DNA of 63,459 nucleotides, counting the filler, from Octopus bimaculoides (lineage: Eukaryota), in the NCBI RefSeq assembly GCF_001194135.2. It is 5 parts of 4 records of this genome, joined end to end, with 100 filler letters (N's around TTAATTAATTAA, not from the genome) between each part and the next. Parts side by side here need not be neighbours in the genome. Positions count along the whole stretch, not along the records: positions 41,445 to 45,856 come from NW_026331999.1; 4 more parts are not named here. One strand, written 5' to 3'. Positions within the stretch are counted from its first letter, which is position 1. Every line of letters starts with the position of its first letter. The position numbers and the translations under genes were made by a program. Of the stretch, positions 41,345 to 46,354 are shown piece by piece. The notes under the pieces were generated by a model. That model was not told the origin of the DNA. It did not search any database and saw only the letters and a program-made list of their open reading frames with translations.

Positions 41345-41514
41345 NNNNNNNNNNNNNNNNNNNNNNNNNNNNNNNNNNNNNNNNNNNNTTAATTAATTAA
41401 NNNNNNNNNNNNNNNNNNNNNNNNNNNNNNNNNNNNNNNNNNNNAGATATCTGATCTCGCTCTGTTTCAAGTAGGAACGCCACATCCCTTATGCGACTGT
41501 TACTGCTCTCTGCT

Positions 41515-41520
41515 TTTATT
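41515..41520 (-). promoter_or_regulatory. Candidate polyadenylation signal AATAAA
   Basis: Plus-strand tttatt about 380 nt downstream of the stop codon at 41898; motif match only. Confidence 0.3.
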
Positions 41521-41897
41521 GTTATTGTAGATCTGTCATTGAAAACCACTTTAATCAATCCAAGAACTACAAATGTCCAGTTTACCCTTCAAACCTATCC
41601 AAAGCAAATCACTGTTATAGCAGAAGTTCCAAGATGTGGTAGAAATCTGATACCATGGGGTGTTCAGATCCACCCAAGTTAAGGATCCCTCCCCTATAGG
41701 TACATGGGACTTTTTAAAATCGTATTTTTAACATTAATGTTTTCGTATTTTGTTATCGATTTTTCTGTTTTTCATTTCTTATAAATTTCTAGCCCTTAAT
41801 ATATAACTACATCCACTTGATCTGATCACTATCGATGGCCACTTGCAACAGTATTCATTGGCCATTACTAACTACTTTCTCTTGACCACTGACAGTA

Positions 41898-44800
41898 TCA
41901 GAGAATCCACCACACACCCAACATTATCACCATCAATGCCATACAACCCACCATGGACCAGAAGTTTTCTTCCTTTTCTAGAAATCTAGCAAAATCTTCA
42001 AGTCTTTTACCATTTATTCTCATTGTTCCAGCGAGAACACCAGCTACTTTACCAACTCTATTGGCCCCACTTTCAAGCTCCCCACCATTTTCTTCTATTT
42101 CATTCTTGTTATTTACCAGTCTAACACCAGCGTCTCTGACTTTACGACCCAGCTTTACCATCCTTTTACCATCCATTATCAATTCCCTACTACAAAATCT
42201 TCTTATGCTCCGACGAATCCATCCTACTATACCGCCCTTTTGTGGCTGTCCACCGCCTTCTCCTCTTATACTATCAAACAGTATCAGTACAACACCCAAC
42301 CTAGATAACACAGATGCATAAAACGACAAAACTACTCTACCGATCTTTCTTAATACTTTATCAACCCATTTGTCTGGAAAAACAATAAACCTCAATCCAT
42401 CCAAAATCCATCTAATTAGTATATAAAGCCATTTTTGTTTTCTTTTTAAACTATTAATGGCATCTTTCATCCATTTCACTGCAGCACCAAACAATTCCTT
42501 TAGTGTAGCAATACCTCTATTAACAATCAGGGAAAGCCATTCTACTGTGCTGGCAACCCATTGCACTATACTAAAAAGGAACCTTCCCAATGCAGTACAG
42601 GCAATCCATCCCACTATACTAGTAACCCATTCCACTACTTTACTAACAACTAATCTCATTGATCTAGAAACCAATCCCACAATGCCGCTAACAACAAATC
42701 CCAGTCCATAACCAATCCACTCCACTACACTATGAGCAACCCACACCACTACACTACCAATAATTCCAACTATACTACTACCAACCAAACCCGCTACACT
42801 ACCAATAATTCCAACTATACTACTGGTAACCAATCCCATTCCATTACCAATCCATTTTAATCCACTAATAACCCCTTCCATTAAACCGCTAACAAAACCT
42901 AGGTTGTAACGACACCTTCTTAATACGCTACTGAACCAATCCATTCCAAAGCTAAGCCATTCTAGTTTATTAGCAAGCCATGGCATTTTACTACCAGCCC
43001 ATCGCATGACACCATTAGCAACCTGTCGTACTTTATTAACAACCGTTTTCGCTCCATTTGCTAACTTACTTATTTCATTACCAAAGAATTCTAGTGCACT
43101 ACTACCAACCCATCCAACATATTTTAACCCTTTACCAGCCAATTCCATTCCACTACTAGCAACCCATCCAAGTCCATTAGCAACATCTTTTACTCCTTTG
43201 CCAGCGAATTCCATTGCACTACTAGCAGCCCATCCAAGTCCATTAGCAACATTTTTTATTCCATTAGCAGCATGTCCGAGTTTATCGGCAACAATCTTCG
43301 CTCCATTACTGGCCAATTGCACTCCACCATTAGCAGCCCGTCCAAGTCCATTAGCAACTTTTTTTAATCCCTCACTAGACAATTCCATTGCAGAACTAGC
43401 CATACATCCAAGTCCATTAGCAACATTTCTCACACCATTGCCAGCCAATTCCATTGAACCACTAGCAGCCCGTCCAAGTCCATTAGCAACATTTCTCACT
43501 CCATTGCCAGCCAATTCCATTGAACCACTAGCCACCCATCCAAGTCCATTAGCAACATTTCTCACTCCATTGCCAGCCAATTCCATTGAACCACTAGCAG
43601 CCCATTCAACTCCATTAGCAACATTTCTCACTCCATTGCCAGCCAATTCCATTGAACCACTAGCAGCCCGTCCAAGTCCATTAGCAACATTTCTCACTCC
43701 ATTGCCAGCCAATTCCATTGAACCACTAGNNNNNNNNNNNNNNNNNNNNNNNNNNNNNNNNNNNNNNNNNNNNNNNNNNNNNNNNNNNNNNNNNNNNNNN
43801 NNNNNNNNNNNNNNNNNNNNNNNNNNNNNNNNNNNNNNNNNNNNNNNNNNNNNNNNNNNNNNNNNNNNNNNNNNNNNNNNNNNNNNNNNNNNNNNNNNNN
43901 NNNNNNNNNNNNNNNNNNNNNNNNNNNNNNNNNNNNNNNNNNNNNNNNNNNNNNNNNNNNNNNNNNNNNNNNNNNNNNNNNNNNNNNNNNNNNNNNNNNN
44001 NNNNNNNNNNNNNNNNNNNNNNNNNNNNNNNNNNNNNNNNNNNNNNNNNNNNNNNNNNNNNNNNNNNNNNNNNNNNNNNNNNNNNNNNNNNNNNNNNNNN
44101 NNNNNNNNNNNNNNNNNNNNNNNNNNNNNNNNNNNNNNNNNNNNNNNNNNNNNNNNNNNNNNNNNNNNNNNNNNNNNNNNNNNNNNNNNNNNNNNNNNNN
44201 NNNNNNNNNNNNNNNNNNNNNNNNNNNNNNNNNNNNNNNNNNNNNNNNNNNNNNCCACTAGCAGCCCGTCCAAGTCCATTAGCAGCATTTCTCACTCCAT
44301 TACCAGCCAATTCGATTGAACCACTAGCAGCCCATCCAAGTCCATTAGCAGCATTTCTCACTCCATTACCAGCCAATTTCATTGAACCACCAGCAACCCG
44401 TCCAAATCCATTAGCAACATTTCTCACTCCATTACCAGTCAATTCCATTGAACCACCAGCAGCCCGTCCAAGTCCATTAGCAACATTTCTCACTCCATTA
44501 CCAGTCAATTCCATTGAACCACTAGCAGCCCGTCCGAGTCCATTAGCAACATTTCTTGCTCCATTACTCATCCATCCCATGACGTTATTACCAAACCATC
44601 GAAAACTACTATCTCTTCCCTCTACTTTACCTTGCCCTCTATCCACACTACAAATTCCTCCTTCTTCCCTAGTTTCTCTTCCCTTTGCCATACTATGACC
44701 ACCACCCACACTACCATCCCCTTCTTCTACCCTATTTTCCTCTTCTTCATCCCTACCTTCCTCGCCCTCTGCATTACCACCCCGTTTCTTTACTTTTTCA

Positions 44801-45573
44801 TGCTCTTCATCTACATTACTATCCCTCATCTCTAGCCTACCACCTGCTCCTTCTTTGCTAGCTTCCCCTCCCTCTACCCCACCACCATCTACCTCTAAGC
44901 TACCATCCCCTCCCTCTACATTATCATCTCCTCCCTCTACATTACCACAACCTCCCGATACAATAGAATGTGCTCCGTCTACCCTAGCAGCTTCTCCCAC
45001 TCTATTGTCACTCCTTCCCTCTTCAATTGCATCCACTCTAGGAAACCACCCACTCCTAATTCCTTCCGTCACACAAATCCTACCCTCTAATCCACATTGG
45101 GTATCCCACTTGCATGCAAAAGACAAGAACAGCGGATAATCATTCTGTAGCATGGAAGCCGCTTTGCATACTTTGTCTTGTTCAATAATTCTTCCTTCTA
45201 TCCTCTCACCAATATGGCTGTGCCATGCAATCGGTAATAGTTCCCATATGGACGTCGATAAAACACCTCCTACGTGATCACTCCCTACATGTACACTAGT
45301 AAACATTACTCCATGTATAAGAACTCTTCCTTTTGTTCCCTCACCAATACGTCTCCGCCATACAATAGGCAGACAATGATATTTAAGATCATTTGACTCT
45401 TCTGCCAATAACCATAACAGACCACTCCCTTCCCATTCTTCACCACTACCACCACGGCCATTGTCATCCTGTTCTCTACCACCATTCTCTCTTTCGTCAC
45501 TACTACCACCATATGCACCCAGTTCGATGCTGTCCATGTAAATATTTTCTTCAATGTATGTCACTGATGCCAC
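41898..45573 (-). CDS. Large terminal coding exon of an uncharacterised ~1,220-aa protein: N-terminal globular region, acidic Gly-rich linker, 22-aa amphipathic repeat array, hydrophobic block, C-terminal TM helix
   Basis: ORFs 43726-45573 and 41898-44288 are stop-free on either side of a 525-N gap and carry the same 66-bp repeat on both flanks. The equivalent ccactag positions (43723, 44255) are 532 bp apart, i.e. 8x66+4, so the frame offset is explained by gap-size error. The ORF begins exactly at a strong acceptor (minus strand ttctgttttgttacaatttttctacag|GTG). It ends ...FWSMVGCMALMVIMLGVWWIL-TGA. Confidence 0.85.
43080..44566 (-). repeat. Coding minisatellite, 66-bp unit (ANGLGRAASGSMELAGNGVRNV)
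   Basis: About 5 near-identical units are visible on each side of the gap, ~8 more are implied by gap length, and ~4-5 degenerate units follow toward 43080. Confidence 0.9.
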
Positions 45574-45600
45574 CTGTAGAAAAATTGTAACAAAACAGAA
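45574..45600 (-). promoter_or_regulatory. 3' splice acceptor with polypyrimidine tract for the large exon
   Basis: Minus strand ttctgttttgttacaatttttctacAG immediately precedes the first ORF codon (GTG, which the ORF track labels M). Confidence 0.75.
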
Positions 45601-46354
45601 ATAAGTAAATACATCAATCCACTAATGGAGTCTCTAAAAAAAAAGGAATATCCCTCAAGGCACACTTCAGTTCTTCAATGACGGGCAGGACAAAGTAGTT
45701 AGTGCAGTCTAAGATATCCTATGCCAAAAACCTATATTGATTTCTTCGACCAACGGCGGTGCTCCAGCATTGCCGCAGTCACATGACTGAAACATGTAAA
45801 GCAATAAAAATCTATGCCATTTTAATCTCGAGCAAGGCCGGGTATCTCTGCTAGTANNNNNNNNNNNNNNNNNNNNNNNNNNNNNNNNNNNNNNNNNNNN
45901 TTAATTAATTAANNNNNNNNNNNNNNNNNNNNNNNNNNNNNNNNNNNNNNNNNNNNATAATTCCACGATTTTTTCTCTTTAATTTTTTTTTTCGTAGGAC
46001 CCTTCACACACACACACACACGCACGCACGCACACTCACGCACGAACCTACACACGCACACGTGCGCACGCACACATATAGAACGCACGCGCGCACACAC
46101 ATTCACTCGCACGCGCACGCATATATATACACATATTTTTATAAATACACATACCGAAATGTATTCATAAAGCTGCGAGATGGTTATGCACACATTTATG
46201 AAGAGATAAATGCATATAAATATATATGTTAATGTATACATTAATAAATGCTTTCATATATATATATACACGAATACATACACAATGATAAATATATACA
46301 TAGAAATAAATAGTTATATACATATAACCTTATACATGTGTGTGCATGTGCGTG

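What the first reader, a model, noticed from the sequence alone, without database searches (positions are those of the whole stretch)
41898..45573. Orphan ~1,220-aa tail-anchored protein built on a giant 22-mer (11/3) amphipathic helix array
Seen: one huge exon encoding roughly 18 near-identical plus 4-5 degenerate ANGLGRAASGSMELAGNGVRNV units. The small-residue motifs are spaced 7-8-7 (22 residues = 6 turns of 3.67). The array grades into W/F-punctuated helices, a Gly/Val/Ile-rich hydrophobic block (SSIVGIIGSV twice) and a terminal TM helix. Known: 11-mer/22-mer amphipathic repeats occur in exchangeable apolipoproteins, perilipins (PLIN4 has a giant G/A-rich helix), alpha-synuclein, group 3 LEA proteins and phage tape-measure proteins. 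Inference: a lineage-specific lipid-surface or membrane-remodelling protein (lipid-droplet coat, lipoprotein or Gly-zipper pore former) whose length is tuned by a coding VNTR. I do not recognise a homologue.
Basis: partly seen in the sequence, partly recalled or inferred. Interest (0 to 1): 0.82.

Follow-up and report, generated by a model that had tools for sequence, protein, structure and literature searches.

The report
Orphan membrane protein with giant amphipathic repeat
A real, long protein-coding exon with no detectable relatives encodes a Pro-free array of 22-residue units with the hydrophobic spacing of a very long lipid-hugging helix, followed by hydrophobic helices and a membrane anchor. 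Its function, its expression and about half of the claimed repeat units (hidden in an assembly gap) are unverified.

Summary
The minus-strand ORF 45573→41898 is real. Its non-repeat parts alone (328 and 367 codons) stay open with chance probabilities of about 5e-12 and 2e-14.

Taken at its nominal 525 N, the gap puts the two halves one base out of frame. However, both gap edges end in the same 7 nt of the 66-nt unit, so a gap of 66n−7 nt (521 nt for n=8) restores register and frame.

Only 9 near-identical and about 7–8 degenerate 22-aa units are actually read.

The unit's hydrophobicity has one dominant harmonic at 3.67 residues (0.0002 of shuffles). This matches α-type control repeats and not β-type ones. 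Degenerate units keep the same nine hydrophobic positions.

No Pfam family matched. No homologue appeared in three word-indexed searches, one exhaustive HMMER search or the contig scans. There was no self-hit either, so the source proteome is not in those libraries. AlphaFold2 was low-confidence and contradicted itself (β in one half, α in the other).

Best reading: a lineage-restricted membrane-anchored protein carrying a PLIN4/α-synuclein-like 3-11 amphipathic helix. This is convergence, not family membership. The function is inferred.

Also noticed: an acceptor-like site at the ORF's 5′ edge, and extreme C-depletion confined to the ORF.

The parts
41898..45573 (-). Whole open reading frame, interrupted by the gap. 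About 1,223 codons if the gap is 521 nt. The stop codon is at 41900–41898.
   Evidence: It is open over 439 + 609 read codons. P(open) for the non-repeat parts is 5e-12 and 2e-14.
45574..45605 (-). Splice-acceptor-like motif (ttatttctgttttgttacaatttttctacag|G) abutting the first codon of the ORF. An in-frame stop lies 17 codons upstream.
   Evidence: This is sequence reading only and has no transcript support.
45535..45537 (-). First in-frame ATG (MDSIELG…, residue 13 of the ORF). It would be the start codon if the gene has a single exon.
44974..45441 (-). N-terminal Cys/Trp-containing region (N-piece residues 45–200). It carries an internal 21-aa duplication (LPIxW…IGE…GR[VI]) and has no detectable relatives.
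   Evidence: Internal repeat at 43% identity, E=2e-5. No hit in the exhaustive HMMER search, Pfam or PDB sequences. AF2 pLDDT is below 50.
44590..44973 (-). Acidic Gly/Glu/Asp-rich low-complexity linker (N-piece residues 201–328, net charge −17). It contains 21-nt / 7-aa repeats (GNVEGGD-like).
44255..44589 (-). N-side part of the 22-aa (66-nt) repeat array: one half-degenerate unit and four near-identical units.
43730..44254 (.). Assembly gap of 525 N. Both edges share the heptamer CCACTAG in repeat register. A gap of 66n−7 nt keeps the frame; the nominal length does not.
43398..43729 (-). C-side part of the array: five near-identical 22-aa units (C-piece residues 1–110).
42954..43397 (-). 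Degenerate units (C-piece residues 111–258). They carry 8- and 4-residue deletions, K replacing R, and W/F appearing. The amphipathic pattern is retained.
   Evidence: Unit-HMM domains reach residue 258. The spectral peak is at 3.62, with 0/500 shuffles reaching it. Per-position table.
42276..42953 (-). W-heptad helices and the Gly/Val/Ile-rich hydrophobic block (C-piece residues 259–484). It includes the 45-nt tandem repeat at 42746–42851 that encodes GLVGSSIVGIIGSVA about 2.4 times. TM propensity is marginal.
   Evidence: ΔG sums +1.4 to +2.5.
41964..42275 (-). Basic/charged helical region (C-piece residues 485–588, net charge +7).
41901..41963 (-). C-terminal transmembrane helix FWSMVGCMALMVIMLGVWWIL, followed directly by the stop codon.
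   Evidence: KD 2.18. It is the only window with a negative insertion-energy sum, −1.3. AF2 draws helix 587–608.
41515..41555 (-). Candidate polyadenylation signals (ATTAAA ending at 41555, AATAAA ending at 41520), about 345–380 nt after the stop codon.

Best explanation
**Shown.** This is a genuine protein-coding exon, probably the large last exon of a gene whose 5′ end may lie outside the piece. It has no detectable relatives. Its product has four modules:
1. An N-terminal region of about 160 aa with no matches.
2. An acidic Gly/Glu linker of about 130 aa.
3. A Pro-free array of 22-residue units. 366 aa of it are read, and it would be about 540 aa if the gap holds about 8 units. Each unit is three xxxΦxxG heptads plus one residue (VRNVANG|LGRAASG|SMELAGNG), which equals six turns of a 3-11 helix.
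4. About 350 aa of W-studded hydrophobic helices, ending in a transmembrane helix at the very C-terminus.

**Inferred mechanism.** Module 4 holds the protein in a membrane. The array is probably disordered when free, because 36% of its residues are Gly or Asn. It folds into a very long 3-11 amphipathic helix that lies flat on a membrane or lipid-monolayer surface.
- Its non-polar face is about 165° wide and made of small residues (M, L, V, A, G, S).
- Its polar face is Asn/Arg/Glu with net charge +1 per unit.
- Binding would come from many weak contacts summed over length, the "Velcro" mode shown for PLIN4 and related to α-synuclein and ALPS motifs.
- Binding strength would therefore scale with unit number.

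The resemblance is physicochemical convergence, not homology.
For: **Coding**
- ORF statistics and the stop counts in the other frames.

**α-type amphipathicity**
- The 3.67-residue harmonic is 125 against less than 30 for the rest; 0.0002 of shuffles reach it.
- The spectral peak at 3.66 is identical to the ApoA-like 22-mer control P0001. The β-helix control peaks at 7.52 and the choline-binding control at 2.20.
- The nine hydrophobic positions (4, 6, 7, 11, 14, 15, 18, 21, 22) have i+3/i+4 spacing and all sit between 131° and 295° on the 3-11 wheel. They are kept in the degenerate units through class-conservative substitutions.
- The direction of the hydrophobic moment stays constant (about 205–228°) over six consecutive units.
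- There is no Pro in the array.
- AF2 draws one continuous helix (residues 2–115) through five units of the C piece.

**PLIN4-like numbers**
- This array: hydrophobic fraction 0.41, aromatic 0.02, charged 0.12, net +1 per consensus unit, μH 0.34–0.39.
- PLIN4: 0.35, 0.002, 0.15, +1 per 33-mer, μH 0.257, unfolded in solution (PMC5889406).
- PLIN4's polar amide residues matter for coat stability (PMC8064757). Here three Asn per unit sit on the polar face.

**Anchor**
- Only residues 589–609 have a negative insertion energy.
Against: - There is no transcript, peptide, orthologue or experimental evidence.
- AF2 on the N piece drew the same repeats as β strands with a 22-residue period at pLDDT 55–59. 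All AF2 confidences are low.
- The same a/d/e hydrophobic pattern fits a coiled coil. The only curated model that reaches its cut-off is the bacterial xxxLxxG heptad repeat TIGR03057.
- μH and hydrophobicity are higher than PLIN4's, so selectivity for lipid droplets is not implied.
- Deletions of 8 and 4 residues shift the hydrophobic stripe in the degenerate part.
- The N-terminus, and hence the topology (cytosolic or lumenal), is unknown.
- The gap could hide a stop codon or a frameshift.
Confidence: 0.4

Rival explanations
1. A self-associating α-helical rod. The xxxΦxxG heptads, with one extra residue every third heptad, would pack as a coiled coil, helical hairpin or bundle. This would form a long stalk or spacer projecting from the membrane anchor, like the heptad-repeat stalks of bacterial YhgE/Pip-type proteins or like tail-anchored golgins. 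It would not lie on a lipid surface.
For: - TIGR03057 (xxxLxxG heptad repeat) scores 23.7 bits against a cut-off of 18.6 on the C piece, and 17.0 on the N piece.
- P0006, an ABC-2/YhgE-like protein with QLADGA heptads, is among the six weak hits and shares AASG..[QE]LA.G motifs.
- Positions a/d/e of each heptad are V-V-A, L-A-A and (S/M)-L-A.
- AF2 draws very long helices in the C piece.
- W residues recur at exactly 7-residue spacing at residues 243–264.
Against: - The array is 36% Gly+Asn, so stable helices in solution are disfavoured (the propensity tables were not discriminating).
- The large hydrophobic residues spread over about 165° rather than forming a narrow a/d stripe.
- Few charged residues are available for interhelical salt bridges: 12% charged.
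- The TIGR03057 match is one short stretch of a low-information repeat model built on bacterial proteins.
Confidence: 0.22
2. A β-solenoid. Each 22-residue unit would be one coil of a parallel β-helix, with Gly/Asn turns at the 7-8-7 motifs and an Asn ladder. This would give a rigid fibre-like ectodomain.
For: - AF2 on the N piece gives strands with a 22-residue period at pLDDT 55–59.
- There are sub-threshold NosD/β-helix similarities: Pfam 14.3 bits against a cut-off of 23.6 and PDB 7o0y at E=1.1.
- P0003, a right-handed β-helix protein, is among the weak hits.
- Gly/Asn-rich turns are typical of solenoids.
Against: - Period-2 (β) power is negligible and the three-sided harmonic (7.33) is weak, at 16.8 against 125 for 3.67. 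The real β-helix control peaks at 7.52.
- The conserved hydrophobic spacing is i+3/i+4, not i+2.
- AF2 draws the same units as one long helix in the other piece.
- AF2 is documented to over-predict β-solenoids for near-perfect repeats (PMC11795689).
Confidence: 0.08
3. Not a working gene. It could be a young or decaying ORF that grew out of a G-rich, C-poor tandem repeat, or a scaffold join of two different repeat loci. It would be untranslated or without selected function.
For: - No homologue anywhere, and no self-hit in the protein libraries.
- Extreme C-depletion (about 9% C at all codon positions; 6% at four-fold sites) is confined to the ORF.
- Among the near-identical units most differences are non-synonymous: 124 against 29 codon differences summed over pairs.
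- The nominal gap breaks the frame.
- N-side and C-side units differ at a diagnostic synonymous site.
Against: - 695 non-repeat codons are open on a strand whose composition predicts a stop about every 13 codons.
- Degenerate units have diverged by up to about 50% yet keep every hydrophobic and polar position class.
- The non-repeat C-terminal 185 aa also show 3.76-residue periodicity, with 0/500 shuffles reaching it.
- The ORF ends in a clean TM helix and is followed by polyadenylation signals.
- The gap edges agree in repeat register.
Confidence: 0.12
4. A membrane-permeabilising or membrane-remodelling protein. The Gly-stripe helices (SSIVGIIGSVAGLVGSSIVGIIGSV, Gly every 3–4 residues) would act as a glycine-zipper oligomerisation or pore module, and the array would serve as a membrane-targeting arm.
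For: - Gly spacing of 3/4/3/5/3 along a 37-residue hydrophobic stretch that has been duplicated.
- Marginal insertion energies (+1.4 to +2.5), as expected for segments that insert only on assembly.
Against: - No similarity to any pore-former family.
- A permanent C-terminal TM anchor is unusual for a toxin.
- There is no evidence of secretion.
Confidence: 0.08

Closest known systems
Perilipin 4 (PLIN4) giant amphipathic helix (29 × 33-mer; PMC5889406, PMC8064757)
   Same: - A very long, near-perfect tandem array with 11-residue-based (3-11) periodicity and essentially no Pro.
- Rich in Gly and Val, with a weakly hydrophobic small-residue face.
- About 12–15% charged residues and net +1 per unit.
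- Amide residues on the polar face.
   Different: - No sequence or Pfam similarity to perilipins.
- The unit is 22 residues, not 33.
- The array is Asn/Ala/Arg-rich rather than Thr/Lys-rich.
- μH is higher (0.34–0.39 against 0.257).
- It is followed by hydrophobic helices and a TM anchor instead of a 4-helix bundle.
- An N-terminal unknown domain and an acidic linker are present.
Exchangeable apolipoproteins (ApoA-I/A-IV/E, Pfam PF01442) and apolipophorin-III
   Same: - A 22-residue amphipathic repeat with 3.67-residue periodicity.
- The best database hit (P0001) is a bacterial 22-mer array. It aligns without gaps with this one at 30–34% identity and itself resembles PF01442 below threshold.
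   Different: - This protein does not match PF01442 or PF07464 at E≤1.
- There is no Pro punctuation between units.
- Charge density is low.
- It is membrane-anchored rather than a soluble secreted protein.
xxxLxxG heptad-repeat proteins (NCBIfam TIGR03057; YhgE/Pip-type bacterial membrane proteins)
   Same: - The unit parses as three xxxΦxxG heptads.
- The model reaches its cut-off on one stretch.
- Local motifs AASG..[QE]LA.G are shared with P0006.
- The repeats are attached to membrane segments.
   Different: - Those proteins are bacterial, with pure heptads (peak 3.50 against 3.66 here).
- Identity is 25–31% over low-complexity repeats only.
- There is no similarity outside the repeats.
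α-Synuclein / ALPS-type lipid-packing sensor helices
   Same: - 11-residue-based amphipathic helix with small or hydroxylated/amide polar residues and few charges.
- The degenerate units add W/F on the non-polar face with an S/G polar face, which is ALPS-like.
   Different: - No KTKEGV motif and no Pfam synuclein match.
- The array is an order of magnitude longer and is covalently tied to a TM anchor.

Membership tests
Perilipin family (Pfam PF03036) | Sequence match to the PAT/perilipin domain model | tested here: not met
   No Pfam family at E≤1 for either piece.
Perilipin family (Pfam PF03036) | 11-mer-based amphipathic repeat region | tested here: met
   The 3.67-residue harmonic dominates. 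This is an analogous feature only.
Perilipin family (Pfam PF03036) | C-terminal four-helix bundle; localisation to lipid droplets | not testable with these tools
Exchangeable apolipoproteins (PF01442 / PF07464) | Match to the ApoA1/A4/E or ApoLp-III model | tested here: not met
   No hit at E≤1. Only the bacterial hit P0001 matches PF01442, and below the cut-off.
Exchangeable apolipoproteins (PF01442 / PF07464) | 22-mer helices punctuated by proline | tested here: not met
   There is no Pro in the 353 codons of repeat plus degenerate units.
Exchangeable apolipoproteins (PF01442 / PF07464) | Secreted (N-terminal signal peptide) | not testable with these tools
   The N-terminus may lie in an unseen upstream exon.
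Group 3 LEA proteins (PF02987) | Model match; highly charged hydrophilic 11-mers | tested here: not met
   No Pfam hit. Only 12% of residues are charged.
α-Synuclein (PF01387) | KTKEGV-type 11-mers / model match | tested here: not met
   No Pfam hit.
Phage tape-measure proteins | Match to PHROG tape-measure families | tested here: not met
   No PHROG family at E≤0.01. No relatives in viral contigs.
xxxLxxG heptad repeat (NCBIfam TIGR03057) | Score above the curated cut-off | tested here: inconclusive
   The C piece scores 23.7 against a cut-off of 18.6, from one short stretch (residues 220–240). The N piece scores 17.0, below the cut-off. This is a repeat-motif model and not evidence of common descent.
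Right-handed parallel β-helix (PF13229 / NosD PF05048) | Model match and β-type hydrophobic pattern | tested here: not met
   NosD scores 14.3 bits against a cut-off of 23.6. There is no period-2 or period-7.3 dominance.
Tail-anchored membrane proteins | Single TM helix within about 30 residues of the C-terminus | tested here: met
   Residues 589–609 are the last 21 residues, with KD 2.18 and a ΔG sum of −1.3.
Tail-anchored membrane proteins | No other TM segment and no signal peptide | tested here: inconclusive
   Three upstream segments are marginal, at +1.4 to +2.5 and KD ≥1.6. The N-terminus is uncertain.

The most novel reading that the evidence does not exclude
An independently evolved "giant amphipathic helix" protein, unrelated to perilipins. 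It would be permanently tethered by a C-terminal membrane anchor, and the length of its lipid-surface-coating arm would be set by a recently expanded 66-nt coding repeat. The whole exon may have been born from a C-depleted tandem repeat: the hydrophobic block shows faint echoes of the unit, and the compositional skew stops at the ORF borders.
Probability: 0.2. Interest if true: 0.7.

Novelty: new variant of a known kind. Interest (0 to 1): 0.45.

Why it matters
PLIN4 is so far the textbook case of a giant, near-perfectly repetitive 3-11 amphipathic helix that coats lipid surfaces through summed weak contacts. An unrelated protein with the same physical design but a 22-mer unit, an Asn/Arg polar face and a built-in membrane anchor would have two uses:
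- It would show that this solution evolved more than once.
- It would give a natural second system for testing how unit sequence, length and tethering determine which lipid surface such helices choose.

The ORF-limited C-depletion and the graded repeat decay also make it a possible example of a large protein arising from a tandem DNA repeat. All of this depends on showing that the gene is expressed and that the gap is in frame.

Tried and rejected
**Homology searches (all negative)**
- Word-indexed searches of 5.8 billion proteins with the N piece, the C piece and the non-repeat C-terminal 367 aa gave no hits. Each search hit the 8000-candidate ceiling, so these are weak negatives.
- The exhaustive HMMER search of the N piece against 1.84 billion representatives gave six weak hits, all confined to the repeats and all from unrelated prokaryotic repeat proteins. 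There was no hit to residues 1–320 and no self-hit.
- The exact-product look-up found nothing.
- Scans of metagenome contigs (protein and exact DNA), prokaryotic genome contigs and viral contigs found no relatives.
- PDB sequence searches gave nothing below E=0.025, and only repeat-versus-repeat noise.

**Family and feature scans**
- PHROGs gave no hit. NCBIfam gave only TIGR03057.
- Rfam found no RNA family.
- The inverted-repeat scan found no terminal repeats suggesting a transposon.
- Literature searches for the peptide motifs returned no papers. A general cephalopod / amphipathic-repeat search gave nothing relevant.

**Structure and propensity**
- Chou–Fasman and Pace–Scholtz propensities could not separate α from β controls.
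When it ran, it gave low-confidence and mutually contradictory models.
- Fold search was therefore not run, because the matches would be meaningless.

**Rejected readings**
- The plus-strand 437-aa ORF across the array (43006–44319) is not coding. It is open only inside the repeat.
- A mitochondrial origin was considered because of the strand skew. It was rejected because the ORF is open in the standard code, with all Trp encoded by TGG and no in-frame TGA, and because the skew is confined to the ORF.


Full report
**1. What is in the sequence**

The feature lies on the minus strand. The ORF listing and direct translation give two open pieces. The N-side piece runs 45573→44257 (439 codons). 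The C-side piece runs 43727→41901 (609 codons), with its stop at 41900–41898. They are separated by 525 N at 43730–44254.

The ORF is far beyond chance. The coding strand's base composition predicts a stop about every 13 codons. Even so, the 328 non-repeat N-side codons and the 367 non-repeat C-side codons are fully open (P≈5e-12 and 2e-14). The other two frames of the same strand carry 19–45 stops each, and both short flanks carry stops in every frame (shuffle control). The 437-aa plus-strand ORF (43006–44319) is open only inside the repeat and is a by-product of it.

**2. The gap, tested first**

With the gap at its nominal length the two pieces are one base out of frame. The N-side frame runs into TAG at 43728–43726. 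However, the low-coordinate edge ends …GAACCACTAG and the high-coordinate edge starts CCACTAGCAG…. The same heptamer therefore sits at both edges, in the same position of the 66-nt unit.

Any true gap of 66n−7 nt restores both the repeat register and the reading frame. For n=8 this is 521 nt, four bases from the estimate. N-side and C-side units differ at a diagnostic synonymous site (GGT against GGC at unit nucleotide 24). The two sides are therefore distinct parts of an array rather than one collapsed copy. Continuity is plausible but not demonstrated, and the gap could hold a stop codon.

**3. The repeat**

TRF finds a 66-nt period with 4.7 copies at 93% matches on the N side and 6.5 copies at 87% on the C side.
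- In protein terms, 9 near-identical units are read (4 + 5).
- There is also one half-degenerate leading unit and about 7 degenerate units, two of which carry 8-residue deletions and one a 4-residue deletion.
- A unit-HMM detects repeat-derived sequence at N332–439 and C1–258, 366 residues in all. Faint echoes occur at C276–303 and C331–360.

Among the near-identical units only 14 of 66 sites vary. The recurrent R/W difference at unit position 20 is CGG↔TGG, a CpG transition.

**4. Helix or strand?**

The Fourier spectrum of the consensus unit's hydrophobicity has one dominant harmonic, k=6 (3.67 residues), with power 125. Every other harmonic is below 30. Period 2.0 scores 1.4 and period 7.33 scores 16.8. 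Only 0.0002 of residue shuffles reach the k=6 value.

I calibrated the method on the database hits themselves:

| Sequence | Type | Spectral peak (residues) |
|---|---|---|
| This array | – | 3.66 |
| P0001, ApoA-like 22-mers | α control | 3.66 |
| P0006, heptad protein | α control | 3.50 |
| P0003, right-handed β-helix | β control | 7.52 |
| P0002, choline-binding repeats | β control | 2.20 |

Perfect repeats inflate shuffle statistics, so independent stretches matter. They show the same signal:
- Degenerate units peak at 3.62 (0/500 shuffles).
- The non-repeat hydrophobic block C300–484 peaks at 3.76 (0/500 shuffles).

Position by position, nine positions (4, 6, 7, 11, 14, 15, 18, 21, 22 in the register SGSMELAGNGVRNVANGLGRAA) are at least 80% hydrophobic across all 17 units. 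Their spacings are 2-1-4-3-1-3-3-1-4, the i+3/i+4 signature. All map between 131° and 295° on a 3-11 wheel. The polar positions change only within class, for example R→K and N→K/D/E.

The moment vector keeps the same direction (about 205–228°) through six consecutive units, then jumps where the 8- and 4-residue deletions occur. There is no proline in the 353 codons of array. The unit parses as VRNVANG|LGRAASG|SMELAGNG. That is three xxxΦxxG heptads plus one residue, which is why 22 residues make six turns.

**5. AlphaFold2**

No alignment could be built, so both pieces were folded as single sequences.
- The N piece (mean pLDDT 37) left the N-terminal region unresolved. It drew the repeats as β strands with a 22-residue period at pLDDT 55–59.
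- The C piece (mean pLDDT 46) was almost entirely helix, including one continuous helix (residues 2–115) through five units. Its pLDDT ranged from 35 to 64.

The same sequence therefore received opposite secondary structures. AF2's tendency to invent β-solenoids for near-perfect repeats is documented (PMC11795689). I treat AF2 as non-decisive and did not run fold searches on these models.

**6. The rest of the protein**

- N1–44 is Gly/Glu/Ser-rich.
- N45–200 contains 5 Cys and several Trp, plus an internal 21-aa duplication (YHCLPIVWRRRIGEGTKGRVL / WELLPIAWHSHIGERIEGRII; 43% identity, E=2e-5). It has a weak period-2 signal and no match anywhere.
- N201–328 is an acidic linker (net −17, 25% Gly, 18% Glu) with 7-aa repeats.
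- After the array come W residues at exact 7-residue spacing (C243–264).
- Next is a Gly/Val/Ile block containing a 45-nt tandem duplication that encodes GLVGSSIVGIIGSVA (42746–42851).
- More W-studded amphipathic helices follow, then a basic region (C485–588, net +7), then FWSMVGCMALMVIMLGVWWIL directly before the stop.

On a simple Hessa-type sum only that last segment is negative (−1.3). Segments C304–331, C368–388 and C466–484 are marginal (+1.4 to +2.5), and the repeat itself scores +13.7. A C-terminal anchor is therefore well supported. A strictly tail-anchored topology is not.

**7. Gene structure**

The first codon of the ORF abuts ttatttctgttttgttacaatttttctacag|G, a polypyrimidine tract followed by CAG. 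An in-frame stop lies 17 codons upstream. The first in-frame ATG is residue 13 (45537–45535).

Either the gene is single-exon and starts there, with no signal peptide, or this is a large terminal exon and the true N-terminus is outside the piece. ATTAAA and AATAAA signals lie 345–380 nt after the stop. Transcript data are needed to decide.

**8. Relatives**

- No Pfam family matched at E≤1, apart from a sub-threshold NosD match on the repeats.
- No PHROG matched, and there were no meaningful PDB sequence matches.
- Three word-indexed searches found nothing, but each saturated its 8000-candidate limit.
- The exhaustive HMMER search of the N piece against 1.84 billion representatives returned six weak hits (best 7e-11, about 30% identity). 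All lie in query residues 322–437, which is the repeat region.
- Those six hits are unrelated prokaryotic proteins with periods of about 22 or 7–11 residues:
  - a DUF937/OmpA protein with ApoA-like 22-mers;
  - two choline-binding-repeat proteins;
  - a right-handed β-helix protein;
  - a TSP3-repeat protein;
  - an ABC-2/YhgE-type heptad protein.
- The best hit aligns without gaps and in register (SGSINSVGDKVTEVTDGIGEKV against SGSMELAGNGVRNVANGLGRAA). This is convergence on the same 22-mer helical design.
- NCBIfam TIGR03057 (xxxLxxG heptad repeat) reaches its cut-off on one short stretch.
- Metagenome, prokaryotic-genome and viral contig scans found nothing.

There was no self-hit, so the source proteome is not in these libraries.

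**9. Mechanism**

*Shown:* the coding exon, the α-type amphipathic design conserved through divergence, the absence of Pro, and the C-terminal TM helix.

*Inferred:* the array behaves like the PLIN4 giant helix. The published PLIN4 values compare with this array as follows:

| Property | PLIN4 | This array |
|---|---|---|
| Repeat | 29 × 33-mer | 22-mer |
| Hydrophobic fraction | 0.35 | 0.41 |
| Aromatic fraction | 0.002 | 0.02 |
| Charged fraction | 0.15 | 0.12 |
| Net charge | +1 per 33-mer | +1 per consensus unit |
| μH | 0.257 | 0.34–0.39 |
| Other | unfolded in solution | 23% Gly, 14% Asn |

In PLIN4 the polar amide residues and the charge placement control coat stability. Here three Asn and two Arg per unit occupy the polar face.

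The most economical model is a membrane-tethered arm that is disordered when free. It would fold onto a bilayer or monolayer surface, with avidity proportional to unit number. The W/F-bearing degenerate units, which are ALPS-like, would give stronger local insertion next to the anchor.

The main rival is a self-associating helical rod built from the same heptads. β-solenoid, pore-former and non-functional-ORF readings are less likely but remain open.

**10. An oddity**

The coding strand has only about 9% C at every codon position and 6% at four-fold sites. The amino acids that need C in their codons (T, P, H, Q) make up 5.6% of the non-repeat residues. The plus-strand GC skew is −0.4 to −0.83 across the ORF but −0.07 to −0.2 in both flanks, and it changes at the ORF borders.

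Combined with the faint unit echoes in the hydrophobic block, this suggests that much of the exon descends from a C-poor tandem repeat. That remains unexplained and untested.

**11. Verdict**

The biophysical reading (a giant 11/3 amphipathic array) is supported by computation. Membership in any known family was tested and not met. Function, expression and polymorphism are untested.

This is a moderately interesting candidate for a convergent variant of the PLIN4-type design. It is not yet more than an in-silico prediction.

Noticed in passing
window 41850–45573 (ORF) versus flanks 41445–41850 and 45574–45856: Extreme strand asymmetry is confined to the ORF. The coding strand has about 9% C at all three codon positions and 6% at four-fold sites. 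The plus-strand GC skew is −0.4 to −0.83 inside the ORF against −0.07 to −0.2 in the flanks. T+P+H+Q make up only 5.6% of the non-repeat residues. The cause is unknown.
   Followed up: partly
window 45574–45605 (minus strand): A polypyrimidine tract followed by CAG|G sits exactly at the first codon of the ORF, with an in-frame stop 17 codons upstream. The ORF may be a terminal exon with its N-terminus outside the piece.
   Followed up: partly
window 43723–43729 and 44255–44261: Both gap edges end in the same heptamer, CCACTAG, in repeat register. The nominal 525 N is 4 nt longer than the nearest in-frame, in-register length of 521 nt.
   Followed up: yes
window 42746–42851: A 45-nt tandem repeat (2.4 copies, 85% matches) inside the hydrophobic block encodes GLVGSSIVGIIGSVA twice. 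It is a second, independent coding duplication.
   Followed up: partly
window 44830–44956: 21-nt / 42-nt tandem repeats in the acidic linker encode 7-aa units (GNVEGGD, DNVEGGD, GSLEVDG, GGVEGGE). They produce a spurious period-2.34 peak in the hydrophobicity spectrum.
   Followed up: partly
unit position 20 across the array (e.g. window 43540–43545, 44330–44335): The R/W alternation among otherwise near-identical units is CGG↔TGG, a CpG transition. W then becomes fixed in the degenerate units, so the "W-punctuated" look may have started as CpG decay.
   Followed up: partly
window 45190–45390 (N-piece residues 62–128): There is an internal 21-aa duplication in the N-terminal region (YHCLPIVWRRRIGEGTKGRVL / WELLPIAWHSHIGERIEGRII; 43% identity, E=2e-5). 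No known domain matches it.
   Followed up: partly
N piece residues 351–438 versus C piece residues 1–110: Single-sequence AlphaFold2 assigned β strands to the repeat in one job and one continuous α-helix to nearly identical units in the other, both at low pLDDT. This is a practical warning about using AF2 on this kind of array.
   Followed up: yes
P0001 residues 194–346 (bacterial DUF937/OmpA protein from the exhaustive search): A prokaryotic 22-mer array (SGSINSVGDKVTEVTDGIGEKV) aligns without gaps and in register with this eukaryote-like array at 30–34% identity. It has a sub-threshold match to Pfam Apolipoprotein A1/A4/E, so it looks like an independent instance of the same helical design.
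   Followed up: partly
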